From IMG/VR virus record IMGVR_UViG_3300033233_000001, positions 186,001-250,000 of that record: a DNA stretch of 64,000 bases; one strand, written 5' to 3'. Position 1 is the first letter of the stretch. Each line of letters begins with the position of its first letter. This document shows, piece by piece, positions 821 through 57,009 of this stretch. Both the position numbers and the translations under genes were made by a program. The notes beneath the pieces were generated by a model that made no database searches, was not told the origin of the DNA, and worked only from the letters and a program-made list of their open reading frames with translations.

Positions 821-821
821 A

Positions 822-39698: not shown

Positions 39699-40219
39699 TT
39701 CGCTCGCGGCCTGACACGCACGACCTTGATGCCGAACAGCCGCAGCGCGCGGTCCTTCACGGCATCGAAGTCGTCCTCGTAGCCGAGCACGGCCTTGTGC
39801 CACTGGTCCCGGCCGGCGCTGTCCAGTCGCCGCATGACCTTGGCGATCGCGTCCCAAGCATCCGCCGCGCGCACCGTCTGGACAACCGCATTCTTCGCCG
39901 GCCGCTCGAACACGTCGAACGTACCTCCAGAGAAAGCGCCGCCCACCGGCCACCAGAGCCTCCCATGCTTGCCGCCTGCGAGCACAAAGAGGTAGTTCCG
40001 CGTATCGTTGTGCTTGAACGCCAGCGAGCCGTCCTCGTTCTGGTGCATCAGCTGGAACTCGTCGGCTTTTGCGTACCGGCGCCCGCCCTTCTCGGTCGGC
40101 ACTGAGTGCTCGCCGAGCGCGCGCTCTAGTCGCCCGAAGGCCGCGTCGATCTCGACGCGCGTGAACTCGTACTTCGGGTTTCGGCGCAGTCGCCTGCCTG
40201 TCCTCGCTCTACGCTTCAT
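39693..40219 (-). pseudogene. Basic-tagged multidomain gene, native frame ends at the inversion junction
   Basis: MKRRARTGRRLRRNP...RPRANK, then non-native codons. Confidence 0.55.
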
Positions 40220-41217
40220 CGGCGCCTCCGACTCGTCCGCTTCTTCTTGCGCCGACTGTTCCGCCGTGGGTGCATCGTCAGGTACAACCCGGTCTGCTTC
40301 TCGAAGACGTCGATCAGCTGGTCGCTGTAGATGTCGTCGAACGCCTTGACCAGCATGGCATTCGCGCCACGCACCCACCAGAACTCGACACGGTACGTGT
40401 CCGATGGCTCCAGCTTGATGACGAGCTTGTTGCCGGTCTCACGACGGCCGGCGAATCCGAACTGCAAGCCGTTCTCGATCGTGTAGATGTTCTTCGCGTT
40501 GAGCATCACCCGAAGCCGGCCGACGCCGCCAAGCTGCTGCGCGATGATGTTGCCGACGTCAGTGACGGCGTTTCGACGACTCTTTCTCCGACGATTGCGC
40601 GCGACCTTCGCCGCATACGCAACTGCCTCCGCCTCCGGCAACCAAGTAGTCCGATCTCGACCTTTCGTCGTGAAACGCACGCCGTAAATCGGACGTCCGC
40701 TGTCGTCCGCATCGACGCGAGAGATCGTCGCGGCCGTGTCAGCACGCAGGCGCCCCATGCCGATCCGATGGCCAGCCGGAAGCACGAGAGACTGGCCAAT
40801 GGCTAGCGCAGGATTCGCTGCCAGCCCCATGTCGATCGGCACGCCGCGAAACGCCTTCTTCGCGTGCTCGAACGCTGCCTCGCGCGAGACGAAGGCGCGC
40901 TCTCGCTTGTATGGCCCGCGTCGCCACGTGTCCGACTGCGCGCCATGATGCAACTGCACGTACCAAGCGTACTTGCCATGCTCGATCGTGATCTTGTCGG
41001 GCTTGGCCGTGTTCTTCCGGATCCGCGCTTCCTGCATCAGCTGGTACACGCGGCGCACTTCGGTCTTCGCTTTCGCGATGGCCGCGTCGTCGCCGGCCTT
41101 CTCTGCCTGCCGCTGCTCGAAGTTCACGCGATCCCAGTCGCCGTAGAGGTCATTACGCGTGAGCACGCGTCGTCGCGACGTCCTGCGCTTTGGCTTTCCG
41201 CTGGTTCGCTTGGTCAT
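40216..41217 (-). CDS. Basic-tagged polyprotein of small domains
   Basis: Tags at both ends; internal RN/KN/AN boundaries; last domain IAQQLGG...SDTYRVEF...DIYSDQL..FEKQTGL. Confidence 0.85.
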   Translation of the reverse strand: MTKRTSGKPKRRTSRRRVLTRNDLYGDWDRVNFEQRQAEKAGDDAAIAKAKTEVRRVYQLMQEARIRKNTAKPDKITIEHGKYAWYVQLHHGAQSDTWRRGPYKRERAFVSREAAFEHAKKAFRGVPIDMGLAANPALAIGQSLVLPAGHRIGMGRLRADTAATISRVDADDSGRPIYGVRFTTKGRDRTTWLPEAEAVAYAAKVARNRRRKSRRNAVTDVGNIIAQQLGGVGRLRVMLNAKNIYTIENGLQFGFAGRRETGNKLVIKLEPSDTYRVEFWWVRGANAMLVKAFDDIYSDQLIDVFEKQTGLYLTMHPRRNSRRKKKRTSRRRR

Positions 41218-41226
41218 CGTCTGACC

Positions 41227-41730
41227 TCAGAAGTAGAGCCCGCCGCCGTTCCAGCGCTCCATGATCTCGTCGAGCACGGCCTGCTCTTGCTCTCGGTCGG
41301 TGGCGTCCGGATCGGGCTCGTCGAGCTTCGGGATGCTTCGGCCACGCTTCGGATGCTTCTTGAGTAGAGCGTCGAGATCCCTCACGTGCATGTACGTGCC
41401 CGACTCCTGCTCCGCCTTGCCCTCCAGGATCATCTCGTTCAGCTGCTCGCGAAGGTCGTCGTCGTCCGCCACCTTCGGCGTCTCGCCATAGTCGAAATCG
41501 ATGAAGGTCAGTTCGTAGCTGGGCGTGATCTCTGCGACGTGAACATGCTTGTTCTTGTCGTACGCGTACACGCCGAAGATCTCGGTCGTCATGGCCTTGA
41601 TGTCGTCGCGCCAATGCTGGCGCTCGTCGAGCTTCACCAGACGCCAGTCTGGCTTTATCTCGGCCGGGTTGCGACGCACCGGCTTACGACTACCGCGCTT
41701 CGGCTTCCTGCTGGTCCTCTTCTTCGCCAT
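41227..41730 (-). CDS. Basic-tagged acidic protein (merged with the upstream gene in the ORF track)
   Basis: TGA-GGAGAAGG-ATG; MAKKRTSRKPKRGSRKPVRRNP. Confidence 0.7.
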   Translation of the reverse strand: MAKKRTSRKPKRGSRKPVRRNPAEIKPDWRLVKLDERQHWRDDIKAMTTEIFGVYAYDKNKHVHVAEITPSYELTFIDFDYGETPKVADDDDLREQLNEMILEGKAEQESGTYMHVRDLDALLKKHPKRGRSIPKLDEPDPDATDREQEQAVLDEIMERWNGGGLYF

Positions 41731-41740
41731 GACCTTCTCC

Positions 41741-42891
41741 TCAGTTCGCCACGAGCCGCGCCGCCTTCCGATGCCGGATGCCCTTGTGCTTCGCCGTCTG
41801 CGCGTGAGCCAGTCGGTACCCAGGCCATCCTTCCGCCACACGGCAGGGTAGTGCTTCATGATGAAACTGCGGATCGCCATGTAGTCGCCCGCGTTGCGCA
41901 CGCGTCCCATTCGGATGTACTTGATGGCGTCGCGCGCGCCCTGCGCGCTCTCGATCGGCCACGCGCGGTCCTTGGGGAACACGAACTTCGATGCTGGCAG
42001 CTTCGTGCGGCGCTTCTTCGAGAGACGCGGATTGTAGTAGAAGGTCTGGTTCGGACGCGACCGTCGTCGACCGTTCGACGCCACGGATGCGAGCATGGCG
42101 CGCGCCTGTCGCACGATACAATCGTCGCCGTGGCCGCACGGGCCACCGGGCGCGATCGGGCCGCGTCCATGGGAGTGGTCTCCGGTCGCTTCGTAGGCGG
42201 CGAGCGCGGTACGGATCGACACCGGATCGCCCGCCTCCATCGCCCGCACGAGGGCTTTGAACGCGGCGTGCTTTTCTGCGACGCGTGAGGGCGGGTTCCG
42301 GCGAGACGTGCGCTTGCCGTCGCGCATCGGCATCTCGGCGATGCTGGCGTTCGGGTACGCCCTCTTCGCGCGCGAGCGCCTCTTGCCCTTGAGGCCCCGC
42401 GACGAGCGCCGACGCCAGCCGTTCTTGCGCGACCGCCTCTTGCTACGATTCGCGGTCGCGGCCTTCGCCTTCGGCTTCTTGGTCACCATGAACGCCACGC
42501 CGATGACGCCTAGAACGCCAACCGCGCCAAGCACCGGCCAGTACCACTCGGTAGCGCTCGGCTCGACGTAGGGCGCGACGGGCCCGGCCGGCGGCGTCGC
42601 CGTCTGCCCGCCCTGCGTGGCCGTGATGATGCTCGCCGCGATCGTGCCTGCCGTCGTCAGCCCCGTGCTGACGTCCTGCGCCGTGTGGTCAGGCGCGCCG
42701 GGCTTGGTCTGACCGAGACCCATCATGCCGGCAAAGAGGTCGCGTGCGGGAGTCCGACCAAGGCCAGCCGCGCCCCACACCGGCGCATGCACGGGGATAA
42801 CGCGCGCGGTCACGCCCCTCGCCGTCACGCCCCTGGCCGTCACGCCACGGTACGCCCAGCCCAAACCGTTCATCGGTGCTCGGTAACTCAT
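41741..42891 (-). CDS. MSY-GLG membrane protein with basic linkers and extra domains; probable 1-nt frameshift near 41809
   Basis: GVTAR x3, GLG x3, TM; LP.SKFVFP..R.WPI domain; alternative frame ends KAARLVAN*. Confidence 0.65.
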
Positions 42892-43568
42892 TACCTTCTC
42901 CTCCGGCTACGCCGGTTTTGCTGCATCTCGCCCTGACGGCGCCGGTACAAAAAGAACCCCAGTCCGCCCACGATCGCCACGACTCCGACGACCCCAGTGA
43001 CCGCAAGCGCCGTCGTCATCGCCGCGGCTGCGGCGCCCTCGCTCTCTGGTGGCGGCGGACCCGAACTCGACGTCACGGGCGGCGCGCCCGTCGGCATCGG
43101 CGGCGGCGGCGGCACCGTGCCAGTAGGATACACGTAGAGGTTCGTGCCCATCGGCATGTTGACGCGGAAGCGCGTCATGACGATCTGCGACTGCGGACTG
43201 ATGCGCTGCGCACTCTGAAGGAGTGCGTCACGTACCATCGTCGCGTACTGCACCGCGGGCTGCGACGACAGCGGCCGCCATCGCGCATAGACGTAGCCGC
43301 CCGCGACCCACCGAATGTCGTCGACCACGTTACTCGTTGCGGTCAGCGCCGAGCGCACGTTGTCGATCACGCCGAGCGCTGCCTGCTCTCTGTTGACGTT
43401 CCGGACCACCAGGTTCGCGTCGAGCCATGGCACCGTCACGTGGGGTCCGAGCAGCCCCATCGCAGGCACGCCGGAGCCGACAGTGAACGACTGCACTGTC
43501 GCCGTGTTGCCCGACGGAATCGGACTCGGTGTCGTTCCGGCCAACGCCTGCGGCTGCCGGTAGCTCAT
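42891..43568 (-). CDS. MSY membrane protein
   Basis: MSYRQPQALAG, Pro-rich linker, TM, NRRSRRRR. Confidence 0.8.
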   Translation of the reverse strand: MSYRQPQALAGTTPSPIPSGNTATVQSFTVGSGVPAMGLLGPHVTVPWLDANLVVRNVNREQAALGVIDNVRSALTATSNVVDDIRWVAGGYVYARWRPLSSQPAVQYATMVRDALLQSAQRISPQSQIVMTRFRVNMPMGTNLYVYPTGTVPPPPPMPTGAPPVTSSSGPPPPESEGAAAAAMTTALAVTGVVGVVAIVGGLGFFLYRRRQGEMQQNRRSRRRR

Positions 43569-44260
43569 GACCGCCTGCCTTCCAACTTGCGGCGACGACC
43601 GCGACGACGCTTGCGGCGCCGTGGATTCCGACGCGTAGCCGCCGACGCGACTCCTGCCGGACTCCAGGCAACCGCAACCTTGCTCAGCGAGTACACGATT
43701 CCGGTCGTCAACAGAAGCCCGCCGCCGCCGATCAACGCCCACTGCCAGATGGGCAGGCCGAAGGGTCGCGGCTCCCGGTACTCGACTCCGACGGGCCCGA
43801 TGCCAGGCGGCGTCGGCTCGTGACCGGTTGCACGAAATCTCTCCTCGAACCGATTGTGTCGACCAGCAGCCTCTCGTGCGGCCAGCACCGCAGCGCTGCT
43901 CGACGTCGAGCCAACCCACGGAGCGTGGTACTGCCGCCACGTCGACAGGAAGCTCTCCGAGAACGAGCCGTACTCGCTCCGCAGCGGATTGCTGGCCGGA
44001 AGAGTTCTGGTGATATCCGTGTTCAGCTGCGAAATCGCGTTCAAGAGCACATTGTAGAACGCAGAGACCTCCGCGGCTGTCCAGAGCGTGTAGTCCGGAA
44101 TGGTGACCGCGCCGAGGCTCTCTTCGTAGCCGCGCGGCACTCGGCCCGCGCGCTCCTCGGCCACGATGTACCGGCCGCCGCCTGGACGGAGGAACGTGTG
44201 GCTAGGAACGTAGCCGCCAGGGCGCTGCCTCGTTCCTGAAGTAAGTGCTCGGTACGTCAT
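43565..44260 (-). CDS. MTY membrane protein with basic tail
   Basis: SLGA, GLPIWQW TM, RRNPRRRKRR. Confidence 0.8.
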   Translation of the reverse strand: MTYRALTSGTRQRPGGYVPSHTFLRPGGGRYIVAEERAGRVPRGYEESLGAVTIPDYTLWTAAEVSAFYNVLLNAISQLNTDITRTLPASNPLRSEYGSFSESFLSTWRQYHAPWVGSTSSSAAVLAAREAAGRHNRFEERFRATGHEPTPPGIGPVGVEYREPRPFGLPIWQWALIGGGGLLLTTGIVYSLSKVAVAWSPAGVASAATRRNPRRRKRRRGRRRKLEGRRS

Positions 44261-44272: not shown

Positions 44273-44956
44273 CTAGACGGCCTCGACCCGAAGGTCGACC
44301 TCGGTGCCGCGCTGAAGCGACTTGTTGTAGGCCCGGCGCGCGAAGGCCGCGGCCGCCGCTTCCGAGGGCGACCGCACGACCAGCGTCGGCAGCGCCTGTT
44401 TACGCATTGCGCGCTGCGTACCGTGCGTCGCGAGGCCTCGGACTACGAAGACGCGCCGGCCGGTCGAGAGAATCGCGGCGGCCTCGGGGGTGCCGTCGAC
44501 GGCCGCGCGGCTCGCGTTACGCTGCATCGCCGGCATCTGAAGCGTCTTGCTCACGGCACGCTGCGTCGGCACCCGTTCCGTCCTGGCCTCGCCGAGTGCC
44601 ATCTGGTGATCCCAGGTCTTCATCCGATCGATGCCCTCGTAGGCCGCCATCTTCCACTCGTGCGTCCAGACCTTCGGTAGCGGCTTCCAGCGATCGATGT
44701 CGGCGGCGACCGCGACGCGTACGCCCGGCACGTGCTCCCAGCCGAAGTACGCGACCGACTCGGCTTCCTGGCGCGTTCGTTGGTTCGGCACGCCGCTGAA
44801 CATGAGCTTGCCGGCTCTGTCGTAGAAGGCGTAGCCCCAGTTCTCGCGCTTGAAGAGGTCACCGAAGAAGCCGTTGCGGCGCGGCCGACTCGTCCGACGC
44901 GCGGGAGCGCGGCGACTGGTCCTCTTTGGCTTGCGGCTTGTACGCTTCACGATCAT
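44273..44956 (-). CDS. Basic-tagged two-domain protein
   Basis: MIVKRTSRKPKRTSRR..RRNG; internal QRN boundary. Confidence 0.8.
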   Translation of the reverse strand: MIVKRTSRKPKRTSRRAPARRTSRPRRNGFFGDLFKRENWGYAFYDRAGKLMFSGVPNQRTRQEAESVAYFGWEHVPGVRVAVAADIDRWKPLPKVWTHEWKMAAYEGIDRMKTWDHQMALGEARTERVPTQRAVSKTLQMPAMQRNASRAAVDGTPEAAAILSTGRRVFVVRGLATHGTQRAMRKQALPTLVVRSPSEAAAAAFARRAYNKSLQRGTEVDLRVEAV

Positions 44957-45657
44957 CACCAAACCAGCATCACGTCCTGCGGCCGGAACCACAGCGACTT
45001 GCCAGAGCGGTCTAGCTTGACGCGCACCGCGCCATCCTTCTTGCGCACGCTCGTAACGTTGCCAAAGCGGTCGCCCATCATCCAGCGGTCGGTTCCTGGA
45101 TGCAGCTGGACGCGGTCGCCTTTGGCGTGGTTCGCACGCATGCGGCGGACCTTGCGCTTCGGGTTCCGACTCGTGCGCCGTCGCGGATTCCTCGCGTACG
45201 GCGTCCCTTCCTCGTCGCCCTTCTCGGACAGGAACCGCTGCCACGCGTCCTTCGCCTTCGCACCCGTCATCACGCGCTTGGTCGACGGCCAGTAGAGCAC
45301 CTCGTCGCCCCGGCGTACCTTGTTGCCCTCGTCATCGACGCTGTCGAAACGCGCGGTGATCCAACGCGGGTCGCCACCGTAGCTGCGGCCGTAGCCGTTC
45401 CGATGGAGGCGCATCTCGGCCATGGCCCGGTCGACCTCGCCGGCACGCACAACCCTAGCGTCCACGACGCGAGCGCCCGACGCGCCAGCCACCAGCTTGG
45501 CGAGCTTCGCCTTGGACGGCGCGCCCCACTTCTGAAGCCATGAATCCTTCGAGACGCGCCCGTGCTCGTCGCGCGCCACGATGAACCACTTCACCTCGTA
45601 GCTGCGGCCGTTGCGGCGACTCGTGCGCTTCGGCTTCTTGCTGGTTCGCTTGGTCAT
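44956..45657 (-). CDS. Basic-tagged three-domain protein
   Basis: MTKRTSKKPKRTSRRNG; HRNG; ARNPRRRTSRNP..RAN; SH3-like last domain. Confidence 0.85.
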   Translation of the reverse strand: MTKRTSKKPKRTSRRNGRSYEVKWFIVARDEHGRVSKDSWLQKWGAPSKAKLAKLVAGASGARVVDARVVRAGEVDRAMAEMRLHRNGYGRSYGGDPRWITARFDSVDDEGNKVRRGDEVLYWPSTKRVMTGAKAKDAWQRFLSEKGDEEGTPYARNPRRRTSRNPKRKVRRMRANHAKGDRVQLHPGTDRWMMGDRFGNVTSVRKKDGAVRVKLDRSGKSLWFRPQDVMLVW

Positions 45658-46268
45658 GATCAGTATTCGTAGTCGCGAACGAGAATGCGCGCGAGTTCCA
45701 CCGCAGCGGCACGCGCCGTCTTGCCGGTAACCGCGCCGGCTACGTCGCCGTGCGCCATCCAGGTGTCTCCGCTGGTTCGCGCAGGGGTCATGAGCTTGTC
45801 CACAGCACCAGCGCGCTTGCCGTCGACGAGCACCGTGTAGAGGTTCTTGGTGACCTTTCGGAGCGTCACCTTCGCGCCGTCCACAGTCGTGTTCCGACGC
45901 GAGCGACGTTTGCGGCGTCCCTTGTTCGGCGTGGTGCTCTTGCCGAACGGCCACGTCGGATGCGACACCGAATGCCGCGCTCGCATATCGAGGCTGCCGT
46001 CCTTCTTGACGGCAAACTCGGTGTTCCGCAGCCAGTCCTGGTCATCGCGGAACTGGACTGGATACGTGCCGCCGCCCGGCATCGGCTCGCGGGCCCAAGA
46101 TGGCTTGTGCGTCCCCGTGAAGCGGTGCACGTACATGTTCAGCGCGCGCTTCTGGGTCGCAGGCGACAGTTGAGCGCCGGACACCATCCTGAACGCCGGG
46201 TTACGGCGTGCACGCGGCCTTCTGCTCGTCCGCGAGCGCTTCGGCTTCTTGCTGGTTCGCTTGGTCAT
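45625..46268 (-). repeat. Identical 33-bp repeats encoding MTKRTSKKPKR (45625-45657, 46236-46268)
   Basis: Exact nucleotide match. Confidence 0.9.
45660..46268 (-). CDS. Basic-tagged two-domain protein
   Basis: RRNP..YVHRFTG.HKP.W..QF.DD.DWL.NT.F; PNKGRRKRRSRRN. Confidence 0.85.
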   Translation of the reverse strand: MTKRTSKKPKRSRTSRRPRARRNPAFRMVSGAQLSPATQKRALNMYVHRFTGTHKPSWAREPMPGGGTYPVQFRDDQDWLRNTEFAVKKDGSLDMRARHSVSHPTWPFGKSTTPNKGRRKRRSRRNTTVDGAKVTLRKVTKNLYTVLVDGKRAGAVDKLMTPARTSGDTWMAHGDVAGAVTGKTARAAAVELARILVRDYEY

Positions 46269-48847: not shown

Positions 48848-48889
48848 GCCCAGCCTTTCGTGTGTGCCCAGTTATCGTTCCCAGAGACC

Positions 48890-49384: not shown

Positions 49385-49398
49385 ATGACTTCTTCTCC

Positions 49399-49692: not shown

Positions 49693-50174
49693 CGTCTCCT
49701 GTGCTTGTTCGGCGTCGGCGCGGTCTCTTCCGGCGGCGGCGGCGCAGCCTCTTCCTCGCCACCCTGGTTACGGTTGGCGACGACGAGTGCGACCGCGGCC
49801 GCTCCGATCGCCCAGGTCATCCACGAGAAGCCGAGCGGACCCGTCACCGTACCATCAGGCTTCGTGGTCTCCAGAAAGGAAAAGAAGCCCTTCTTCGGCG
49901 TCGCGTTCGCGCTGGTCATCATCGGCATCGGCTGCGCCATCGAGCCATCCGGCATCTGCGTCGGAAGTGGCATCGAGATCGGCGGACTGATCGGGACAGC
50001 CGTCATCGGCGGCGGCGACGCGTCCACTGCCTGCGGTTGGGTGTACGCGTTAGGATCCGTCGTGAACTGCACCGTGGCCGACGGTGTAGTGTCAAACGGG
50101 TCGGTGGCGACCTCGGTCCCGAGACCATGAAGGCCGGGCAAGCGACGCGCGCGCGCTGGTTGACGATACGACAT
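49689..50174 (-). CDS. MSY-GLG membrane protein
   Basis: MSYRQ..HGLG; TM; TPNKHRRR. Confidence 0.8.
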   Translation of the reverse strand: MSYRQPARARRLPGLHGLGTEVATDPFDTTPSATVQFTTDPNAYTQPQAVDASPPPMTAVPISPPISMPLPTQMPDGSMAQPMPMMTSANATPKKGFFSFLETTKPDGTVTGPLGFSWMTWAIGAAAVALVVANRNQGGEEEAAPPPPEETAPTPNKHRRR

Positions 50175-50177
50175 GAC

Positions 50178-51005: not shown

Positions 51006-52102
51006 CGCCGCCCTCTGCTCGTGCGCGTTCGGCGCCTGTTCGGCGTCGGCCCCGGTCGCAGCAACAGATACCCACCGACCGCAACCGCGCCGCCGACTCC
51101 GATGTACATCCACGGGACCCCAAACAGCCCCGCTCGCGGAGCCACCGGCGGCGGCACCAGTTCCTGCGGCGTCGGCGGTACGAGACTGCCTTCAGGCCGC
51201 TCGACCGTCACCTCCGGCGGCGGTGGCGTAACCGTGTTCGCAACGCACACGCCTGTCGCATCACGGTAGTAGCCGTCGTTGCACGCGATCTCCCTCGACC
51301 CCGAGCCCGTCACGTCCTGACCCTGGACCTTGCCCGCGTCGGTCCCGGCCTTCGCGGCCGCTTCGTCGGCGGCGACCTTCGCGGCAGCCGCTTCCGACGC
51401 ACTCTTCGCGTCCTCGGCCGCCTTCGCCGCCGCGGCCGCAGCAGCCGCGTCATCGGCCGACTTCGCAGCCGCAGCAGCTTCCGCGGCGATCCTCGCATCA
51501 GCCGCCGCCTTGGCCGCAGCCGCCGCTTCGGCCTCGGCCTGAGCCTGCGCCGCCGCGCTCGCCTGCTGGCGCTGAAGAGTAGCCAGGGCCGCAGCCAGAT
51601 TCGCCGCGCGCTGACGCAGCCGTTCTGCCGTCGCAGCCGCCTCTGCGGCAGCCTTCCGGCGCGCCGTCTCTGCGGCAGCAGCGGCAACAGCCGGATCGAA
51701 CTCCATGGCCGCGACTCTCGCCATCAGCTTCGGACCGCGAATCTGCCAGTTGATGTAGCCGATCCGCGCGGTGCCGCGGTACCGATCCGAGATCGCTCCC
51801 TTGATGAGATTGACCAGCGCACGCGTGTTGACCAGGCCCGCCGCGTTCACCGCGAGGACTCCGATCCAACTCGCCCCGTTGTTCAAGGCGGTCACGTCCG
51901 ACCGTGCCGTTGTGCCCTCCGTACGAGACCGAAGCGCCGCAGACCGCAGCATCGCAGCCGCCCGCATCGCACGCACGATCTCGTTGCGCTCTGCCGCCGG
52001 ATAGCCCGCACGGTAATCGACCCTGCCGGGCAGAACCGACTTGCTACTGAGTCCGGTGGGCGCGAGGTCCAGGCCGGCGCCAAGGTCGTTCGTGTAGCTC
52101 AT
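51002..52102 (-). CDS. MSYTNDLGA membrane protein with Ala-rich coiled stalk
   Basis: Long A/E/K-rich helix; GVPWMY TM. Confidence 0.8.
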   Translation of the reverse strand: MSYTNDLGAGLDLAPTGLSSKSVLPGRVDYRAGYPAAERNEIVRAMRAAAMLRSAALRSRTEGTTARSDVTALNNGASWIGVLAVNAAGLVNTRALVNLIKGAISDRYRGTARIGYINWQIRGPKLMARVAAMEFDPAVAAAAAETARRKAAAEAAATAERLRQRAANLAAALATLQRQQASAAAQAQAEAEAAAAAKAAADARIAAEAAAAAKSADDAAAAAAAAKAAEDAKSASEAAAAKVAADEAAAKAGTDAGKVQGQDVTGSGSREIACNDGYYRDATGVCVANTVTPPPPEVTVERPEGSLVPPTPQELVPPPVAPRAGLFGVPWMYIGVGGAVAVGGYLLLRPGPTPNRRRTRTSRGRR

Positions 52103-53067
52103 TCGAGACTTCCCTTCAGCGCTGTCACCAGCGCGGACATCGCGGAACTAGACACCGGAGTAAACGTCGTGGCAATCCCAGAACGGAAAACCTGCTTGTT
52201 CATCGACGACGGAAGCCCGAGAACAGGCGGCCGGATCGTCGCGGCCGCAAACGCCGCTCTCGCAGCATCGCTCGCACTCGCAATCGCCGTTCGCCGAACG
52301 ATCTGCCGTGGCGTCTCGCCAGACAGGACCGCCGCCAGCAGCTTCTCCGGAATCCGAATCTCATCACCGTTCGTGTTGGGACCGAAGTTGAAGCCGCCCG
52401 GCCAGTCACCATAGTCGAGGCGCGCCGCGCCGCTGTTCACGAGCGCTACTCCCTCGTCGTAGTAGGCCTTCAACGCCTGGGCCATCGCGCCATCGTCCTT
52501 CGTGCTCACCGGTGCCGAGGGGGACAGGTATCCACTCTGCATGAGTGCGTTTCGCAACACGTCCTTGTACAAGCTATCGGCCACGTACAGCCGCACGTAG
52601 CCATCCGGATTCACGATCCAACGAGGCACACTCGTGCTCGTCAGACGCTCGTAGAGCGGCCGAGAAATCTGGAGATCTTTGCTGGAGTTCGTGTTGGGAC
52701 CGAAGTCGGTACCCGTCGGCCACTCCGCGTCGTTCCGACCAGTCCTCACCCAGTACGAGCGCACCGCCGTGATGAACGGGCCGTCATCCCTGATCTCATA
52801 GTCGTGGCTGCCATCCCACTTCTGCACGTTGCGACGCGCCGTGAAGAGATGACTGTCAGCGTCGACGTTCCGACGATCGATCACGCCCAAGTCGGCCAGC
52901 CTCGACATCATGGCGTTCAGGACAGCCTCGTCTCCGATCTTCACGTAGTCCATGTCGCCATGCCGGAACGCGCTGGCCTGCATCGAACTCCACGAAGGCA
53001 GCGACGAGGGCGAGGGCGGCGTCTGTCCAAGACCGTTCCGCCGAACGCGAGGCATACGATAGGTCAT
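52099..53067 (-). CDS. MTY-GLG protein with two internal repeats (PG-binding-like)
   Basis: DFGPNTN/NFGPNTN; L..LG....DDG...A...Y pattern twice. Confidence 0.7.
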   Translation of the reverse strand: MTYRMPRVRRNGLGQTPPSPSSLPSWSSMQASAFRHGDMDYVKIGDEAVLNAMMSRLADLGVIDRRNVDADSHLFTARRNVQKWDGSHDYEIRDDGPFITAVRSYWVRTGRNDAEWPTGTDFGPNTNSSKDLQISRPLYERLTSTSVPRWIVNPDGYVRLYVADSLYKDVLRNALMQSGYLSPSAPVSTKDDGAMAQALKAYYDEGVALVNSGAARLDYGDWPGGFNFGPNTNGDEIRIPEKLLAAVLSGETPRQIVRRTAIASASDAARAAFAAATIRPPVLGLPSSMNKQVFRSGIATTFTPVSSSAMSALVTALKGSLE

Positions 53068-54518
53068 GACGTCCTCCTGCTCGTTCGACGAGCGCGACGA
53101 CGACGCGCGTTGGCGGTCGGAGCCGCAGCCCGCCGCTTACGCAGCGCGCGCACGGCGACCGCACCACCGACGACGATCGTCGCGCCGCCGCCCAGCCACG
53201 CGTACACGGGCACGCCGTTGAAGTCCTTCTGCCACCAAGGCAAACACGACTGCCCACGAGACTGGGCGTTCAGCGCCAGCTGCGAGTCGATCAGAGCCAT
53301 CTTCTGCACGATGGCGTCACGGTTCTGCGTGATCGCACCGGCCTTTGCTTGCGCGTCCGAGAACTGCAACGCCACCTGCTTCAACTGCGTGTCCAACGAG
53401 CGCTTGGCGTTCGAGAAGTACAGACACTTCATGTACTCCTTCGTCACCGCCATCGTGTCCTGCGCGACCGCGCCGTCTACGGCCTGAACGACCTCGTTGC
53501 GGATCGCTCTGACGATCGCGCCGCCGTCCGGGTTCGTCTCGCTCTGGACATACTGCTGAAGCCACTGCGCGCCGTCGAGCCCGCCCTGAAGCGCGGCCTT
53601 CGCGTTCGTAAGCGCAGCCGTGGTCGCATCGAGCGCCGCGACGGCCGCTGTGCACGCGTCGCCCGCAGCCGCATCGCGCGCCGCCGGGCCTGCAACCGCC
53701 GCCGCTGCGACGATCGCCTCTGTCTGTCCCGCCGCCGCCAGCGCCGCCGTCACCTTGGCCGCCGCGTCGTTGAACTGCCGCGTCGTCCGCGTGAGCGCAA
53801 TCGCCCTGTTGAGCGGGCTGCCGGAGAACGGCGCGGCAAGCGCCGCAAAGAACCCGACCGTCGCGCTCGCCGAGCGGACCGCAGCCATCTGCAACGCGTT
53901 GTCGCTCTGGTCCTGGGCGACCTTGACGATCCCGCCCTTGCCGATCGGACTCGGCAAGGTCGCCGATGCAGATCCTGCCGCCTGCACCGGCACGCCACTC
54001 GCCTTGCCGACGACGAGCAAGCCGAACGCACGAGCCGCGCTTGCCGAGACTGCGCCCGGCCAGGCAAACGCCACCCACAGCGTGCCGTGCGAGATCGCCT
54101 GATTCGTTGCAGCATCGCGCATCCAACCGGACGCCACGAAGTTGGGAGCCGAATCGACGATCCGATCGGTGATCGCCTGGCCGGTGGCCTGGATGAGTGC
54201 GTTGCCGCCGGCCCCACCACCGTAGATGCCGTCGAGCGCCGCCTGCACCTTCACGTCGTCGAGCGTCACGTACGGCCAGGCCATGACCGCGACCTGACCG
54301 GGGCCTGGGTTCTCCGTAGTTCCGAGCGTTTCGAGCCGCAGCGACTGGCAGCTGTACGGGATGATGTCCAACGTCAACTGTCGCTGTGCAGCAGCCGTTG
54401 GCGCCGCCAACTGAGGAGCAACGCGCACGTTCGTGATCACCAACGGCGCAGCCGGGCGCGTCGGGTCAGAGGATGTCCCCTGTCCCAAGCCGAAGCCGTG
54501 CTGTGCGCGGTAGCTCAT
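53064..54518 (-). CDS. MSY-GLG large membrane protein
   Basis: MSYRAQHGFGLGQ; GVPVYAW TM; TANARRRRARRTSRRTS. Confidence 0.82.
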   Translation of the reverse strand: MSYRAQHGFGLGQGTSSDPTRPAAPLVITNVRVAPQLAAPTAAAQRQLTLDIIPYSCQSLRLETLGTTENPGPGQVAVMAWPYVTLDDVKVQAALDGIYGGGAGGNALIQATGQAITDRIVDSAPNFVASGWMRDAATNQAISHGTLWVAFAWPGAVSASAARAFGLLVVGKASGVPVQAAGSASATLPSPIGKGGIVKVAQDQSDNALQMAAVRSASATVGFFAALAAPFSGSPLNRAIALTRTTRQFNDAAAKVTAALAAAGQTEAIVAAAAVAGPAARDAAAGDACTAAVAALDATTAALTNAKAALQGGLDGAQWLQQYVQSETNPDGGAIVRAIRNEVVQAVDGAVAQDTMAVTKEYMKCLYFSNAKRSLDTQLKQVALQFSDAQAKAGAITQNRDAIVQKMALIDSQLALNAQSRGQSCLPWWQKDFNGVPVYAWLGGGATIVVGGAVAVRALRKRRAAAPTANARRRRARRTSRRTS

Positions 54519-54530
54519 CTTCGTCGATCC

Positions 54531-54971
54531 TCAGTATCCAGGCCACCCGTATACGTACGACGGACACCAGGTTCCCATGCAGCGCTGCCAGTCGCTCGGG
54601 TCCAGGAATCCATCGCAGCGCCACTGCTCGCTGCACACCGGATAGTTACCACCGTAGTAGTAGCCGTCGCCGTAGTAGCCCGGCCAGCCCCAACCCCAGC
54701 CGCCGCCCCAACCGCGCCCGCGCCAACGACCACCGTGCCCATGGCCGTGTCCGCCGTGGCCATGACGAGGCGCCCCGCCGCCCATGAACCCGGCGCCGCC
54801 GCCGCGAGGCCCGAGGCCGCCGCCGCCAGGCAGATTCCGAGGCGCACCTGGCATACCGCCGCCGGGACCGCGCATGGGCATTCCGCCACCCATCCGACCA
54901 GCGCCGCCGCCCCGGCCACCGCCACCGCCGCCACCCTTGCCGAGACCGTATAGAGGCTGCCTGTAGCTCAT
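54531..54971 (-). CDS. MSY-GLG Gly-rich, Cys/Trp/Tyr-rich protein
   Basis: MSYRQPLYGLGK; poly-Gly. Confidence 0.65.
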   Translation of the reverse strand: MSYRQPLYGLGKGGGGGGGRGGGAGRMGGGMPMRGPGGGMPGAPRNLPGGGGLGPRGGGAGFMGGGAPRHGHGGHGHGHGGRWRGRGWGGGWGWGWPGYYGDGYYYGGNYPVCSEQWRCDGFLDPSDWQRCMGTWCPSYVYGWPGY

Positions 54972-55090
54972 GACTGATCTCCGTACTTACGTTCCCACGC
55001 CCTGGCCTCAGGGCTGTTTTCGTACCTGACCGCGGCGACAAACCAGAGCGCGAATGCGCCGACCGCCATCCACTTGAGTCGCTCAGACAT
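54968..55090 (-). CDS. 40-aa single-TM peptide
   Basis: Coupled at both ends. Confidence 0.5.
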   Translation of the reverse strand: MSERLKWMAVGAFALWFVAAVRYENSPEARAWERKYGDQS

Positions 55091-55431
55091 CAGCGCCTCC
55101 GCTTGTTTCGACGCGCCCTGCGACGACCACGATTGGCCGTGGGCGACGCCGCGCGCGCCTTCATGCGCGTATAGAAGAACCACAGCGACCATGCACTCAA
55201 CCCGAGACTCACGAACGCGACGTACTCCATGCGCCGCGCGCGCGCACGGTCTTCATCGATGAACGCGTCCTGCCCGAGATGGTCGTTCATCAGCCGCGGC
55301 GGATGCGTCTGAAACACCATGGGAGAGACCTGGCCACGAAGCCGCTGGGGCTGGCCGTAGTCGGCGAAGACCCATGGGTTCGTAACGCCCCACCTCTGGA
55401 AGCCGAGCGACCTGTCGACCTTGTAGCTCAT
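55090..55431 (-). CDS. MSY membrane protein with basic tail
   Basis: MSYK..SLGF..HLGQ; TM; TANRGRRRARRNKRRR. Confidence 0.78.
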   Translation of the reverse strand: MSYKVDRSLGFQRWGVTNPWVFADYGQPQRLRGQVSPMVFQTHPPRLMNDHLGQDAFIDEDRARARRMEYVAFVSLGLSAWSLWFFYTRMKARAASPTANRGRRRARRNKRRR

Positions 55432-55892
55432 CGAGATCTCCCGCTGGTCCGCTTCTTCGGCCGGCGGCTGCCGCGCTTCTTGCTGCCGCGCTTCTTGTTC
55501 GCACGAAGCGGCGAGCCGTGGATCTCGCCGTCGTCGACGTACAGGTCGAACATCCCAAACTTCTTCGCCGCTTTCGAGAGGCGCTTCTGGTTCTCTTCGG
55601 ACAGATCGTCCTCGTCCCAAAAACCAGTGCCATGACCGTTCCTGTTCAACCAGAAACGGTTGCCCGCGCGATCGTCGTCGATGCCGGCCTGATCGTCTGT
55701 CGCGCTCCAGAAGTACTCGTTGCCACCGAAGAACTCCTCGCAGTCTCGCTTCATCGCTGCGAGCGTCTCTGCTGCGATGTCAGCGGGTCCGTAGTGCTTG
55801 TCGAGCGGTTCGCCGCCAGACTCGTCGCTCTCGTCGTTCGTCGACCAGAGCGCCGCTTCGATGTACGCATCCGTGAACTTCTTGAGGCTCAT
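55428..55892 (-). CDS. Small phage-type domain plus C-terminal tag
   Basis: F.DAYIEAALWS...FWLNRNGHGTGFWD; RANKKRGS..KKRTSGRSR. Confidence 0.85.
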   Translation of the reverse strand: MSLKKFTDAYIEAALWSTNDESDESGGEPLDKHYGPADIAAETLAAMKRDCEEFFGGNEYFWSATDDQAGIDDDRAGNRFWLNRNGHGTGFWDEDDLSEENQKRLSKAAKKFGMFDLYVDDGEIHGSPLRANKKRGSKKRGSRRPKKRTSGRSR

Positions 55893-56572
55893 CGTGCCCT
55901 CCCGCTGGTCCGCTTCTTCGGTCGACGGGAACCACGCTTGTTCTTCCGGAACCCGTACACGCCGAGTTCCTTCGCGAGCACCACCATTTCTGCGTCCGTG
56001 AAGCCCTCGGGATGGAACGAACGGCGACGCTCTTCGCCGCGCTCGAAGTACCCCCGGTCCTGTACGACATCCGTCTCGGTGAACCAGCGCGGCACACCAG
56101 CAGAGGAGTCGGCTTCGAGTGAGCCGCCAGACTCGTACCTGAGCTTCTTTGCGGCAGCCTCAACCCAGCCGATGCCGTCGTCCTCGTCGAGGTCGTCCGG
56201 CGTGATGAGCATCGAGTCGTCCCAGCCGCGCTCAGCGACATCGCCCTCTTCTGCGCTCTCGGGCGTCACGATGTCGTAGGTCACGTTGATCACGCGGCAC
56301 TCGTCGCCGCCGGGACGCGTGACGGTCCACTCGGCCGCCGCGCCGCCGCCGCCCGTGTAGCTCTGGCCGGGCTTGAGTGCCTTGAGCGCCTTGACCTCGT
56401 CATCGCCGAGGCCCTCGCCGTTCACGCGCAGGAACTCATGCAGCGACGTCGGAGCCTCGCCTTGAGCCTCAGTGTCGCCGTAATCGGCAGGCGAATGGTA
56501 GGTGATCTCTCCATCGATCAAGATCGTGAAGTGGTCACCGGTCCTGCCGTTGCGCTTCGGGCGCCTAGTCAT
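55889..56572 (-). CDS. Two acidic domains, tagged at both ends
   Basis: MTRRPKRNG; VTYDIVTPESAEEGD; RKNKRGSRRPKKRTSGRAR. Confidence 0.82.
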   Translation of the reverse strand: MTRRPKRNGRTGDHFTILIDGEITYHSPADYGDTEAQGEAPTSLHEFLRVNGEGLGDDEVKALKALKPGQSYTGGGGAAAEWTVTRPGGDECRVINVTYDIVTPESAEEGDVAERGWDDSMLITPDDLDEDDGIGWVEAAAKKLRYESGGSLEADSSAGVPRWFTETDVVQDRGYFERGEERRRSFHPEGFTDAEMVVLAKELGVYGFRKNKRGSRRPKKRTSGRAR

Positions 56573-57009
56573 CGACGCCTCCGGCTCGTGCGCTTCTTCG
56601 GGCGACTCGTGCGCCTGCGACGCGGAACCGGGTTCCGACGCGAACGGCGGCTCCTGCGCTTCCCGCGATTCGCCGCCGTTCCATGCTGGATCCGGTACTC
56701 CGCCGCCCATTCCTCGGCCATGTCTTTCGCGACCTGCTTGCGCGTGGCCGGCGTGAACATCGAGTTCCACCGATCAGGCGTCCCCTCCTCACGTGCCCAC
56801 TTCTTGGCGCCCGCGTCGACGAGGTACTTGAAAGCCGCAGGCGCGCGCGCCGCGTCGAAGACGCCGCGCTTCATCTTCTTTTCGAGACCTTTGTGAACGT
56901 ACGTCGTCGTCGATCGATACAAGTCGCCATCGTTGTCGATGTAGAGCTTGAGATCATCCGCGCTGTACACGCGGTTACAACGAGAAGTACGCGTTGTTCG
57001 ACGGACCAT
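56569..57009 (-). CDS. Small phage-type domain tagged at both ends
   Basis: LKLYIDNDGDLYR..F.YLVDAGAKK; AANRGK..KKRTSRRRR. Confidence 0.82.
   Translation of the reverse strand: MVRRTTRTSRCNRVYSADDLKLYIDNDGDLYRSTTTYVHKGLEKKMKRGVFDAARAPAAFKYLVDAGAKKWAREEGTPDRWNSMFTPATRKQVAKDMAEEWAAEYRIQHGTAANRGKRRSRRSRRNPVPRRRRTSRPKKRTSRRRR

What the first reader, a model, noticed from the sequence alone, without database searches (positions are those of the whole stretch)
40216..57009. Small effector-like phage domains strung into Asn-delimited polyproteins inside the structural operon
Seen: 40216, 44273, 44956, 45660 and 55889 each contain 2-4 unrelated domains of 40-110 aa, separated by basic linkers ending in RN/KN/AN. 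49399, 55428 and 56569 are single tagged domains. They are interleaved with membrane genes and translationally coupled (ATGA overlaps). Several domains resemble families I recall as stand-alone small genes in tailed phages (FWLNRNGHGTGFWD; LYIDNDGDLY; QQLGG..SDTY.VEF). Established: polyvalent proteins of phages and conjugative elements deliver many conflict domains with the DNA. Inference: early host-takeover or anti-defence domains relocated for delivery from the particle.
Basis: partly seen in the sequence, partly recalled or inferred. Interest (0 to 1): 0.7.

Follow-up and report, generated by a model that had tools for sequence, protein, structure and literature searches.

The report
Asn-bounded basic tags string viral cargo domains
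A large uncultured sediment virus joins small, independently evolving protein domains (some related to early phage genes and bacterial toxins or antitoxins) with arginine-rich peptides that begin and end in asparagine; this looks like a loading and processing code for putting accessory proteins into the virus particle, but neither step has been shown.

Summary
Between window 40.2 and 57.0 kb, eleven minus-strand genes encode one to four small domains. Each carries an N- or C-terminal basic tag of the KRTSRKPKRTSRR type, and the domains are joined by basic linkers bounded by Asn. These genes sit among about 14 membrane-protein genes, and 10 of 25 gene junctions are ATGA overlaps.

The domains behave as independent modules. 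Relatives carry them in other orders and combinations. At least seven have stand-alone homologues of 80-140 aa. One is 54% identical to the third gene from the left end of a T7-like phage, next to an ArdA-like gene.

The same tag sits on a BrnT toxin, a Doc/Fic toxin, two HicB-like proteins and a 987-aa protein. As a tail it follows the transmembrane helix of most membrane proteins in the block. A 680-aa protein holds a tandem array of about 15 such peptides.

The tagged genes are variable insertions between conserved core genes. One core gene encodes a transglutaminase-fold enzyme with an invariant Cys-His-Asp triad, a candidate processing protease.

Packaging, delivery and cleavage at Asn are inferred, not shown. 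The genome is not recognisably a tailed phage: no terminase, portal or HK97 capsid gene was found in it or in four complete relatives.

The parts
40216..41217 (-). Tagged polyprotein, 333 aa. N-tag 41152-41217; D1 41011-41151; D2 40810-41010; D3 40594-40809; linker RRRKSRRN 40570-40593; D4 40258-40569; C-tag 40219-40257.
   Evidence: D4 matches phrog_9437 (E 3e-18). HMMER against 1.8 billion representatives finds 2379 clusters with this domain. Of the top 146, 50 are 130 aa or shorter. D3 occurs alone as P0208, 80 aa. D1-D4 are shuffled in P0002-P0011.
41227..42891 (-). Membrane-anchored polyprotein, 554 aa. MSYR..GLG N-terminus plus TM, 42448-42891; basic linkers 42295-42447; domain 42073-42294; linker 42049-42072; domain about 41734-42048; internal tag 41668-41733 (M387, with its own SD GGAGAAGG); C-terminal domain 41230-41667.
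   Evidence: Residues 290-322 match phrog_16160 (E 1.5e-4). The orthologue in relative L023 (1484-2749) carries different and duplicated domains.
44273..44956 (-). Tagged protein, 227 aa. The 28-aa N-tag ends in RRN|G. The body of about 199 aa has no clear internal linker.
   Evidence: No Pfam, PHROG or phage-database match.
44956..45657 (-). Tagged polyprotein, 233 aa. Tag 45610-45657; two domains in 45187-45609; double linker 45130-45186; SH3-like domain 44959-45129.
   Evidence: Residues 175-227 match phrog_5546 (E 3e-13) and small mycobacteriophage genes. In P0010 the middle domain is joined to D3 of the 40216 protein (86% identity).
45660..46268 (-). Tagged polyprotein, 202 aa. Tag 46200-46268; domain 45924-46199; linker 45891-45923; domain 45663-45890.
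   Evidence: Residues 28-109 are 54% identical (E 2e-22) to the 91-aa ORF03 of Pseudomonas phage vB_PsyP_3MF5. That gene is the third from the left end and lies next to an ArdA-like gene.
47198..47656 (-). Single tagged domain, 152 aa. The N-tag ends in RRN|G.
   Evidence: No family match.
47659..48093 (-). Single domain, 144 aa, with a short N-tag (..VRN|P) and a double C-tag after ..VAN|R.
49399..49692 (-). Single domain, about 96 aa, with a C-tag after ..KKN|R.
55428..55892 (-). Single domain, 154 aa, with a C-tag after ..RAN|K.
   Evidence: Matches phrog_1915 (E 7e-20). tblastn finds it in 158 phage records.
55889..56572 (-). Tagged protein, 227 aa. N-tag MTRRPKRN|G, an acidic body of 203 aa, and a C-tag after ..RKN|K.
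   Evidence: No phage-database match.
56569..57009 (-). Single domain, 146 aa, with a short N-tag and a long C-tag after ..AAN|R.
   Evidence: No sequence match. The Atlas structure search gives TM 0.82-0.87 to viral clusters of 107-132 aa.
42891..44260 (-). Two core membrane-protein genes (42891-43568 and 43565-44260). Each has an MSYR or MTYR N-terminus, a C-terminal TM helix and a basic tail.
   Evidence: Conserved in relatives.
46265..47185 (-). Membrane protein with an MSYR N-terminus, a TM helix and the tail ..VTAN|RGKRRK.
48104..55431 (-). Row of membrane or core genes: 48104-48847, 48890-49384, 49689-50174, 50178-51005, 51002-52102, 52099-53067, 53064-54518, 54531-54971 and 55090-55431. 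Most have MSY[RTK]..GLG N-termini, a C-terminal TM helix and a tail of the form [TS][AP]N|R-rich. Gene 49399-49692, listed separately, is interleaved among them.
   Evidence: The row is syntenic in L019 and G003.
57012..58856 (-). Two core genes (57012-57353 and 57357-58856), each with a C-terminal hydrophobic segment and a basic tail.
   Evidence: Conserved in relatives.
32134..34176 (-). Core protein, 680 aa, outside the finding. In the N-terminal 430 aa, 36% of residues are K or R and there are 21 Asn. Splitting at Asn gives about 15 Arg-rich peptides of 7-32 aa that end in RRN. The C-terminal half is hydrophobic. A paralogue lies at 31496-32104.
   Evidence: Conserved next to the capsid-like gene in all relatives.
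61996..62571 (-). Conserved transglutaminase-fold enzyme with a Cys-His-Asp triad, 191 aa. Candidate processing protease.
   Evidence: Pfam Transglut_core is below threshold. The family has 153 clusters, with D109-C110-D111, H148 and D165 invariant. AF2 model: pLDDT 87, pTM 0.82. Foldseek probability 1.0 to LapG and to putative Cys proteases 3isr and 3kd4.
29738..31271 (-). Most conserved gene of the lineage and a candidate capsid protein. Here it is split: exon 1 lies at about 31230-31271, a LAGLIDADG ORF at 30554-31159, and the rest at 29738-30451.
   Evidence: The fold model is poor and gives only weak jelly-roll-type hits.
8096..8443 (-). BrnT ribonuclease toxin domain with the N-tag MRKKRTSRKN|V.
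   Evidence: Pfam BrnT_toxin, E 1.4e-27.
62945..63418 (+). Fic/Doc-family domain with a C-terminal KRTSRR tag.
   Evidence: Pfam Fic, E 3e-13.
34778..35232 (-). HicA toxin (34778-34963) and a HicB-like protein carrying an N-terminal KRTSR tag (34960-35232).
   Evidence: Pfam HicA_toxin, E 5.5e-7. UPF0150, E 2.5e-4, is below threshold. No positional orthologue in relatives.
11891..14854 (-). Protein of 987 aa with an N-tag ending in GN|P, a weak GHKL-ATPase hit and an HEVTH motif at residue 655.
35837..38290 (-). Protein of 817 aa. The phrog_2319 domain (residues 42-467) is joined through KRTSR/Asn linkers (residues about 476-600) to a C-terminal domain. In relatives that C-terminal domain stands alone behind an N-tag.

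Best explanation
The Arg/Lys-rich, Ser/Thr-containing peptides (prototype KRTSRKPKRTSRR) are address tags and linkers. I propose that they bind a polyanion, either the viral DNA or the anionic face of a viral membrane. That would draw whatever is fused to them into the DNA-containing interior of the particle as it assembles.

The same peptide is used in three ways:
- as the tail of a dozen tail-anchored membrane proteins;
- as a tandem array in a 680-aa core protein;
- as the N-tag, C-tag or inter-domain linker of small accessory domains.

The accessory domains are exchangeable cargo. They include relatives of stand-alone early or non-structural phage genes and of toxin-antitoxin components. 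They would enter the host with the genome and act before any viral gene is expressed.

The Asn at each end of every basic peptide marks the module boundary. It is most likely the P1 residue of a processing cut (..RRN|G/P/A.. and ..[TS][AP]N|R..). Such cuts would free the domains and release short protamine-like peptides. The conserved transglutaminase-fold Cys-His-Asp enzyme at 61996-62571 is the candidate protease.

Shown: the tag and linker grammar, its statistical excess, module independence and shuffling, stand-alone homologues, the toxin and antitoxin cargo, the variable position of cargo genes among core genes, and a conserved enzyme with a Cys-protease fold.

Inferred: polyanion binding, encapsidation, delivery, cleavage at Asn, and which enzyme cuts.
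For: - Tag grammar and Asn excess.
- The same Asn-bounded basic peptide follows the TM helix in most membrane proteins of the block, and the motif is kept in orthologues whose tails otherwise differ.
- A tandem array of RRN-terminated peptides lies in the conserved 680-aa protein next to the capsid-like gene.
- Domains are shuffled between relatives and begin or end where stand-alone homologues begin or end.
- Stand-alone homologues: phrog_9437, phrog_5546 and phrog_1915; RcSpartan gp44; 3MF5 ORF03 beside an ArdA-like gene; P0208 and P0140; Atlas structural clusters.
- Tags occur on BrnT, Doc/Fic and HicB-like proteins.
- Cargo genes have no positional orthologues, whereas the neighbouring core genes do.
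- The block is co-directional and translationally coupled. It contains the lineage's most conserved proteins.
- A transglutaminase-fold enzyme with an invariant triad is a core gene of the lineage.
- Precedents: the T4 capsid-targeting sequence and prohead-protease processing (PMC5694885); adenovirus core precursors cut by its protease (PMC4246237); packaged polyvalent proteins (PMC5512222).
Against: - There are no proteomic, structural or expression data, because the virus is known only from a sediment metagenome.
- No structural hallmark gene is recognised, so 'morphogenesis block' rests on conservation, synteny and weak fold leads.
- The residue after the boundary Asn varies (G, P, A, S, T, D, V, R). 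This fits a P1-only specificity but also a mere helix-capping role.
- No legumain-, Ulp1- or T4-type protease was found.
- Known transglutaminase-fold proteases such as LapG are not Asn-specific (own knowledge).
- Some tagged proteins lack a terminal Asn: the two HicB-like proteins, and tags at genome 53, 71 and 110 kb.
- HicA/HicB and the AbrB-like/Doc pair could be ordinary addiction or defence modules.
Confidence: 0.45

Rival explanations
1. The tags act inside the infected cell, not in the particle. They tether the fused domains to DNA, RNA or ribosomes, or the membrane. The polyproteins stay uncut. The flanking Asn residues are only N-cap and C-cap residues of an Arg-rich helix.
For: Asn (with Ser, Thr and Asp) is a favoured helix N-cap, and Asn or Gly followed by Pro is common at helix C-ends (own knowledge). 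The residues after the boundary Asn are mostly G or P. BrnT and Doc act on RNA and the translation apparatus, where a polybasic tag could concentrate them. No Asn-specific protease family was found.
Against: Capping could be done by Ser, Thr, Asp or Gly, yet Asn is used almost exclusively, although it makes up only 2.3% of the proteome. The same grammar on TM tails and in the 680-aa array next to capsid-like genes points to an assembly role. A conserved protease-fold enzyme lies in the block.
Confidence: 0.22
2. The polyproteins are structural core or nucleoid-condensing proteins, comparable to adenovirus V, VII and Mu. The small domains are spacers or DNA-organising modules rather than effectors against the host.
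For: The basic content and the kinship of the linkers with the 680-aa polybasic core protein. Most domains have no known function. The genes are placed among core genes.
Against: The tagged genes are not conserved in position or content among relatives, which is unlike structural components. Several domains are homologous to non-structural small genes of unrelated tailed phages and to toxin-antitoxin proteins.
Confidence: 0.15
3. The boundary Asn cuts the chain itself, by succinimide formation without a protease. This is how capsid-interior cleavages work in nodaviruses, tetraviruses and reovirus mu1 (Asn-Pro), and at the NPTH site of FlhB/YscU.
For: Asn-Pro and Asn-Gly, the two chemically special Asn bonds, are the commonest boundary pairs: 14 of 40 RRN+1 positions. 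Asn autocleavage is established in virus maturation (own knowledge of MEROPS asparagine peptide lyases).
Against: Known Asn lyases need a folded active-site environment, not a disordered basic linker. Many boundaries are N-A, N-S, N-T, N-R or N-K. This variant is compatible with the main explanation apart from the catalyst.
Confidence: 0.1
4. The multi-domain ORFs are accidental fusions of decaying small genes and have no function as polyproteins.
For: The internal tag in the 41227 ORF has its own Shine-Dalgarno sequence and ATG. One tagged gene at 38947-39700 is broken by an inversion.
Against: The same grammar, with in-frame Asn-bounded linkers, recurs in many independent relatives with other domain combinations. 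Coding signatures are intact.
Confidence: 0.05

Closest known systems
Polyvalent proteins of phages and conjugative elements (Iyer, Burroughs, Anand, de Souza, Aravind 2017; PMC5512222)
   Same: Several unrelated domains sit in one polypeptide encoded by a mobile genome. Architectures vary between relatives. The proteins are predicted to travel with the DNA and act in early conflict with the host. Release of the domains by proteolysis has been proposed.
   Different: The proteins here are short (150-550 aa) and built from domains of 45-150 aa. They lack the hub catalytic domains (zincin-like metallopeptidase, ART, kinases), and nothing was found by Pfam or PADLOC. The domains are separated by an explicit Asn-basic-Asn linker. 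One is fused to a membrane anchor. The genomic context has no portal-terminase or conjugation genes.
T4 internal proteins and Alt with a capsid-targeting sequence; ejection proteins of phiKZ and SPN3US cut by the prohead protease (PMC5694885, PMC10052503)
   Same: A short N-terminal propeptide of 10-20 aa directs otherwise unrelated proteins into the head. It is removed at a fixed P1 residue. The cargo is injected with the DNA.
   Different: P1 in those systems is Glu (L/I-x-E, A/S-x-E); here the boundary residue is Asn. The tags here are strongly basic, occur at N- and C-termini and between domains, and are shared with membrane-protein tails. No S77 or assemblin-type protease, portal or HK97 capsid gene was found.
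Adenovirus core precursors (pVII, pre-Mu, pVI) and their protease (PMC4246237)
   Same: Arg-rich, DNA-bound core proteins are made as precursors. They are cut on both sides of basic peptides inside the particle. Short basic peptides remain with the DNA.
   Different: The adenovirus sites are (M/I/L)XGG-X or (M/I/L)XGX-G, cut by a clan CE protease. No Ulp1-like protease was found here. The host is a bacterium, to judge from the endolysin-like genes with peptidoglycan-binding domains in relatives (by eye). Here the precursors also carry accessory domains.
Asparagine peptide lyases (nodavirus and tetravirus coat proteins, reovirus mu1 Asn42-Pro43, FlhB/YscU NPTH)
   Same: Chain scission occurs exactly after an Asn, often Asn-Pro, and in viruses it takes place in the capsid interior during maturation (own knowledge).
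   Different: Those sites lie in folded, conserved environments. Here the Asn flanks low-complexity basic peptides and is followed by many different residues. Self-cleavage was not tested.
LapG-type bacterial transglutaminase-like cysteine proteases
   Same: The 61996-62571 protein has this fold and the Cys-His-Asp triad.
   Different: Sequence identity is only about 14-18%. LapG is a periplasmic, calcium-dependent enzyme that cuts an adhesin at a di-alanine site (own knowledge). Nothing shows specificity for Asn or for the tagged proteins.

Membership tests
Polyvalent proteins (PMC5512222) | Two to 15 distinct domains in one polypeptide of a phage or mobile element | tested here: met
   Two to four domains in the 40216, 41227, 44956 and 45660 proteins. 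The 35837 protein also joins two domains.
Polyvalent proteins (PMC5512222) | Domain repertoire centred on conflict enzymes and DNA-binding domains, with a zincin-like metallopeptidase hub in about 36% | tested here: not met
   No Pfam, PHROG-annotated or PADLOC catalytic domain in the polyproteins. Only the separate 987-aa tagged protein has an HExxH motif.
Polyvalent proteins (PMC5512222) | Architectures vary by domain shuffling among related elements | tested here: met
   P0002-P0011 and L023 carry the same domains in other orders and with other partners.
Polyvalent proteins (PMC5512222) | Encoded next to portal-terminase packaging genes or conjugation genes | tested here: not met
   No terminase, portal or HK97 capsid gene recognised.
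Polyvalent proteins (PMC5512222) | Transferred into the recipient cell with the DNA | not testable with these tools
   Needs virion proteomics or an infection assay.
T4-type CTS cargo | Short N-terminal targeting propeptide on otherwise unrelated proteins | tested here: met
   N-tags of 8-28 aa on at least 12 unrelated proteins in the window. This is met in form only; targeting itself was not tested.
T4-type CTS cargo | Cleavage C-terminal to Glu in an L/I/A/S-x-E motif | tested here: not met
   The tags end in Asn and contain no Glu.
T4-type CTS cargo | S77 or assemblin-like prohead protease in the genome | tested here: inconclusive
   PF03420 was not found, but its control search was silent everywhere. 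The phrog_53 hit of 51002-52102 is weak (E 7e-4) and lies in an Ala-rich, low-complexity stretch.
Adenovirus-type core maturation | Basic DNA-associated precursors with basic peptides bounded by cleavage sites | tested here: inconclusive
   The sequence pattern fits. Cleavage is not shown.
Adenovirus-type core maturation | Clan CE (adenain/Ulp1) protease and (M/I/L)XGX-G or XGG-X sites | tested here: not met
   PF02902 is absent and the linker boundaries are Asn. Many N-termini do carry [LM]xGLG motifs, which was not followed up.
Adenovirus-type core maturation | Jelly-roll major capsid protein | tested here: inconclusive
   The model of the most conserved protein is poor (pLDDT 57). Its best hits are jelly-roll capsid proteins but are not significant. 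Atlas features are nearest to PM2 P2 and PRD1 P3 at 0.75-0.77.
Transglutaminase-like cysteine proteases | Papain-like transglutaminase core fold with a Cys-His-Asp triad | tested here: met
   Invariant C110, H148 and D165 in 38 sequences. Confident model. Foldseek probability 1.0 to LapG, 3isr, 3kd4 and TglA. The Pfam score is below threshold (17.3 against 23 bits).
Transglutaminase-like cysteine proteases | Peptidase activity on the tagged proteins | not testable with these tools
   The co-folding job gave no verdict, which counts neither for nor against.
Type II toxin-antitoxin proteins (cargo) | Significant match to a toxin or antitoxin family | tested here: met
   BrnT E 1.4e-27, Fic/Doc E 3e-13 and HicA E 5.5e-7, all above threshold. 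The two HicB-like UPF0150 hits are below threshold.

The most novel reading that the evidence does not exclude
The window belongs to an undescribed lineage of 150-300-kb bacterial viruses that are not tailed phages. In this reading the particle has jelly-roll-type shell proteins, an internal membrane studded with about a dozen tail-anchored proteins, and a polybasic core that matures by proteolysis. An Asn-directed transglutaminase-fold protease would cut a universal 'Asn-basic-Asn' code. The same code would anchor DNA to the membrane, supply protamine-like peptides, and load a changeable set of effectors (toxins, antitoxins, early-gene products) for delivery. This would be an adenovirus-like core-maturation logic evolved independently in a giant bacterial virus.
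Probability: 0.2. Interest if true: 0.92.

Novelty: new variant of a known kind. Interest (0 to 1): 0.8.

Why it matters
If the tags are a loading code, they offer a simple, portable rule for placing arbitrary proteins inside a virus particle. They would also give a sequence-only way to list the proteins this lineage delivers into its host. Among those are many small domains of unknown function that are widespread in cultured phages as early genes; the D4 domain alone has more than 2,300 clusters.

The finding also points to a possible Asn-directed maturation protease of the transglutaminase fold. It flags a widespread sediment and soil virus lineage, with more than 268 clusters of its hallmark protein. 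That lineage has genomes of 150-300 kb and none of the recognisable hallmarks of tailed phages. This bears on how large bacterial viruses with other particle architectures can become.

Tried and rejected
- Close-relative scans of viral contigs with the 40216 and 53064 proteins found nothing. Relatives were reached through protein searches and the conserved 237-aa protein instead.
- Pfam and PHROGs gave nothing on 20 large or core proteins. PADLOC gave nothing on the polyproteins.
- Genome-wide family overviews showed replication, RNA-repair and transposase genes but no structural hallmark in the listed top 25 families.
- Searches for Terminase_6N, TerL_ATPase, HK97 Phage_capsid, FtsK, legumain, Ulp1 and S77 were all negative. 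No Walker A motif was seen in the block's proteins.
- The fold model of the capsid candidate was poor. Searches of PDB, VIA-wide, BFVD and Atlas gave nothing significant. Sequence searches of solved structures were empty.
- tblastn against phages gave no match for 56569, 44273, 55889, the C-terminal part of 41227, or 57357.
- Co-folding the transglutaminase-fold enzyme with a tagged substrate gave no verdict. It is not evidence for or against binding.
- An automated count of tag ends in relatives was swamped by Arg-rich spurious frames of high-GC DNA. Only the own-genome contrast from that count is used.
- The idea that the tags are Tat or Sec signals was rejected, because no hydrophobic core follows them.
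- The phrog_53 'head maturation protease' hit of 51002-52102 was rejected as a low-complexity match.
- Alignment A3 of the polyprotein with its fragments was too poorly aligned to be worth a folding job.

Full report
**What the window is**

The window is bases 186,001-250,000 of a 297,749-bp IMG/VR virus record. The record has 65% G+C and is estimated about 90% complete. It was assembled from a sediment metagenome. An array of 11 tRNA genes lies at window 199-1859. From about 17 kb to the window's end nearly all genes are on the minus strand.

**The observation**

The maximal ORFs overlap by up to 300 nt, but this comes from upstream GTG extension. The real starts are at a recurrent basic peptide.

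Eleven genes between 40.2 and 57.0 kb begin and/or end with a tag of the type M-[T/I/A]-KRTS[RK]KPKRTSRR...RN or ...[A/K]N-[R/K]...KRTSRRRR.
- 40216-41217 holds four domains of 47-104 aa.
- 44956-45657 holds three domains.
- 45660-46268 holds two.
- 41227-42891 is a membrane protein followed by three or four domains.
- 44273-44956 and 55889-56572 are a tag plus about 200 aa with no clear internal linker.
- 47198, 47659, 49399, 55428 and 56569 are single tagged domains.

Every inter-domain linker, and nearly every tag, is bounded by Asn. Asn makes up 2.3% of the predicted proteome. Basic runs in window 31-62 kb are directly preceded by Asn in 13 of 52 cases and followed by it in 16 of 45. In the rest of the genome the figures are 4 of 102 and 4 of 89. 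Seven of 13 basic N-termini in the window are followed directly by Asn, against 0 of 12 outside it. After ..RRN the commonest residues are Pro and Gly.

The tagged genes sit among about 14 genes for proteins with an MSY[R/T/K]...GLG N-terminus, a C-terminal transmembrane helix and a tail that reads [T/S]-[A/P]-N followed by an Arg run. Ten of 25 junctions are ATGA overlaps.

**The domains are independent modules**

A protein search with the 333-aa product found ten relatives' proteins that use the same linker grammar with the domains in other orders and with other partners. P0002 has D2-D1-X-Y-D4. P0010 joins D3 to the middle domain of the 44956 protein. P0007 and P0009 carry D1 followed by unrelated domains.

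The module ends match natural protein ends. D2 follows ..RKN here but is the N-terminus of P0002 and P0004. D4 starts and stops within a few residues of the termini of stand-alone proteins such as P0140, 101 aa.

A full HMMER scan found 2,379 clusters with D4. Of the top 146, 50 are 130 aa or shorter and 15 exceed 500 aa. D3 occurs alone as P0208, 80 aa.

Other domains also have stand-alone relatives:
- D4 matches phrog_9437, the third domain of 44956 matches phrog_5546, and 55428 matches phrog_1915. All three families have profiles of 70-141 aa.
- RcSpartan gp44 is a 100-aa gene among small non-structural genes.
- The first domain of the 45660 protein is 54% identical to the 91-aa ORF03 of Autographivirus vB_PsyP_3MF5. 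That gene is third from the left end, downstream of host promoters and next to an ArdA-like gene.
- The 56569 domain matches viral clusters of 107-132 aa by predicted structure, TM 0.82-0.87.

Several domains have no detectable relatives outside this lineage.

**The tag is used well beyond the finding**

It occurs on a BrnT toxin (8096-8443), a Fic/Doc protein (62945-63418, plus strand) and two HicB-like proteins (34960-35232, beside a HicA gene, and 16493-16774). It also occurs on a 987-aa protein with an HExxH motif.

In the 817-aa protein 35837-38290, KRTSR/Asn linkers join a phrog_2319 domain to a C-terminal domain. In relatives that C-terminal domain stands alone behind an N-tag.

A conserved 680-aa protein (32134-34176) has an N-terminal 430 aa with 36% Lys+Arg and 21 Asn. 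Split at Asn, it falls into about 15 Arg-rich peptides of 7-32 aa that mostly end in RRN. A hydrophobic C-terminal half follows.

**Context and relatives**

A 237-aa product (29738-30451) is the most conserved protein of the lineage, with more than 268 clusters, the best 120 at 69% identity or more. It led to five related viral contigs. Two of them are complete with terminal repeats, at 160 and 162 kb. A 166-kb ENA scaffold is also related.

Comparing gene by gene, the membrane proteins, the polybasic protein, the capsid-like genes and a 191-aa protein (61996-62571) are conserved in position. None of the tagged small-domain genes, and not the HicAB pair, has a positional orthologue. The cargo genes are therefore variable inserts in a conserved block.

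**The protease candidate**

The 191-aa core protein has invariant Asp-Cys-Asp, His and Asp positions in 38 sequences. It gives a confident model, pLDDT 87. It matches the transglutaminase-like cysteine-protease fold: LapG, 3isr, 3kd4 and TglA, all at probability 1.0. It is the only protease-like gene I found in the block.

**What kind of virus**

Nothing marks a tailed phage. Terminase, HK97 capsid, S77 protease and FtsK-type ATPase profiles found nothing here, and Terminase_6N found nothing in four complete relatives. PHROG and Pfam overviews list no structural family among the top hits.

The model of the hallmark protein is beta-rich but poor, pLDDT 57. Its best hits are jelly-roll capsid proteins (picorna-like VPs, PR772 P3, P23-77 VP17, SPV1, FLiP) at non-significant scores. 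Language-model features place it nearest PM2 P2 and PRD1 P3, at 0.75-0.77 only. I treat a membrane-containing, non-tailed particle as a lead, not a result.

**Mechanism**

The most economical reading has three parts:
- The basic peptide binds a polyanion (DNA or anionic lipid) and so carries its fusion partner into the particle core.
- The Asn at both ends is the P1 residue of processing cuts.
- The attached small domains are exchangeable cargo that acts on arrival in the host.

This reading resembles three known systems. In T4, a capsid-targeting sequence directs cargo into the head and the prohead protease removes it, though there P1 is Glu (PMC5694885). In adenovirus, the viral protease cuts core precursors around basic peptides (PMC4246237). 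Polyvalent proteins also combine several domains predicted to travel with the DNA (PMC5512222), but their defining catalytic repertoire and genomic context are not met here.

None of the functional steps is shown. The main rival is that the tags act in the cell and the Asn residues only cap an Arg-rich helix. A variant is self-cleavage at Asn. The co-folding test of enzyme and substrate gave no verdict.

**Verdict**

Packaging, delivery and cleavage remain untested, and 'tailed-phage structural operon' is not supported. The grammar and its setting are a new variant of known cargo-loading systems, in a lineage that deserves study in its own right.

Noticed in passing
window 29738-31271 (-) and 28617-29675 (-): The lineage's hallmark (capsid-like) gene is split. 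Its first 14 codons (MPKIVGTRERVHQP) lie at about 31230-31271. A LAGLIDADG-type ORF follows at 30554-31159, and the rest of the gene lies in 29738-30451. Relatives have one uninterrupted 260-265-aa gene. This looks like a group I intron carrying a homing endonuclease. A second endonuclease-like ORF sits just downstream.
   Followed up: partly
window about 39140-39700: A segment of about 0.55 kb is inverted. The plus strand 39185-39700 encodes a tagged polyprotein part (MSRRRTSRRPRRTSRN..) homologous to P0009 residues 102-166. The continuation is on the minus strand at 38947-39138. Codon-position G+C agrees with this. The Logan contig from the source run has the same arrangement. No long inverted repeats flank the segment.
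   Followed up: yes
window 32134-34176 (-) and 31496-32104 (-): A conserved 680-aa protein whose first 430 aa form a chain of Arg-rich peptides ending in RRN, joined to a hydrophobic C-terminal half that ends ..GYAGGLFARNLFAG. A short paralogue has the same ends. A related GLF..NLF motif starts the membrane protein 48890-49384 and its relatives.
   Followed up: partly
window 41227-61499, many genes; also genome 69.8-72.8 kb and 207.5-209 kb: Two further short motifs recur. MSY[R/H/K/T] followed within 5-25 residues by GLG is found at the N-terminus of at least 15 proteins, often as [L/M]xGLG, which resembles the adenovirus protease site. GIGNY[V/R] lies near the ends of five proteins (19140-19385, 59645-60214, 61510-61980, 63415-63744, 23910-24260). 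Their role is unknown.
   Followed up: no
whole genome G000 and relatives G001-G004: No terminase, portal, HK97 capsid, sheath or FtsK-type ATPase was recognised in a 298-kb genome, and Terminase_6N is absent from four complete relatives of 153-171 kb. This genome is nearly twice the size of its relatives.
   Followed up: partly
window 61996-62571 (-): A transglutaminase-fold Cys-His-Asp enzyme is a core gene of the lineage. It has 153 clusters and occurs on the same contigs as the hallmark protein.
   Followed up: yes
window 34778-35232 (-) and 62715-63418 (+): There are two toxin-antitoxin-like pairs. One is HicA with a tagged HicB-like protein. The other is a tagged Doc/Fic protein preceded by a small ORF that looks like an AbrB/MazE-type antitoxin by eye (not tested). 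Here the tag is on the toxin in one pair and on the antitoxin in the other.
   Followed up: partly
window 54531-54971 (-): A 146-aa protein with an MSYR..GLG start, followed by long Gly runs and a Gly/Trp/Tyr-rich stretch (GWGWGWPGYYGDGYYYG). It has no relatives in the loci examined.
   Followed up: no
genome outside the window (positions not mapped): The family overviews list four or five TnpB/IS605-type genes, two integrases, three RNA ligases, RtcB, a Ro60/TROVE protein with a vWA domain, NAMPT, a PurZ-like adenylosuccinate synthetase, Hint/homing-endonuclease domains and a TOTE-type primase domain.
   Followed up: no
window 199-1859 (-): An array of 11 tRNA genes: Ile, Arg, His, Ala, Asp, Phe, Trp, Gln, Lys x2 and Tyr.
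   Followed up: no
window 11891-14854 (-): A 987-aa protein with an N-terminal KRTSR tag ending in GN|P, a weak GHKL-ATPase hit (E 0.007) and an HEVTH metallopeptidase-like motif at residue 655. It is the nearest thing in the window to a classical polyvalent protein.
   Followed up: partly
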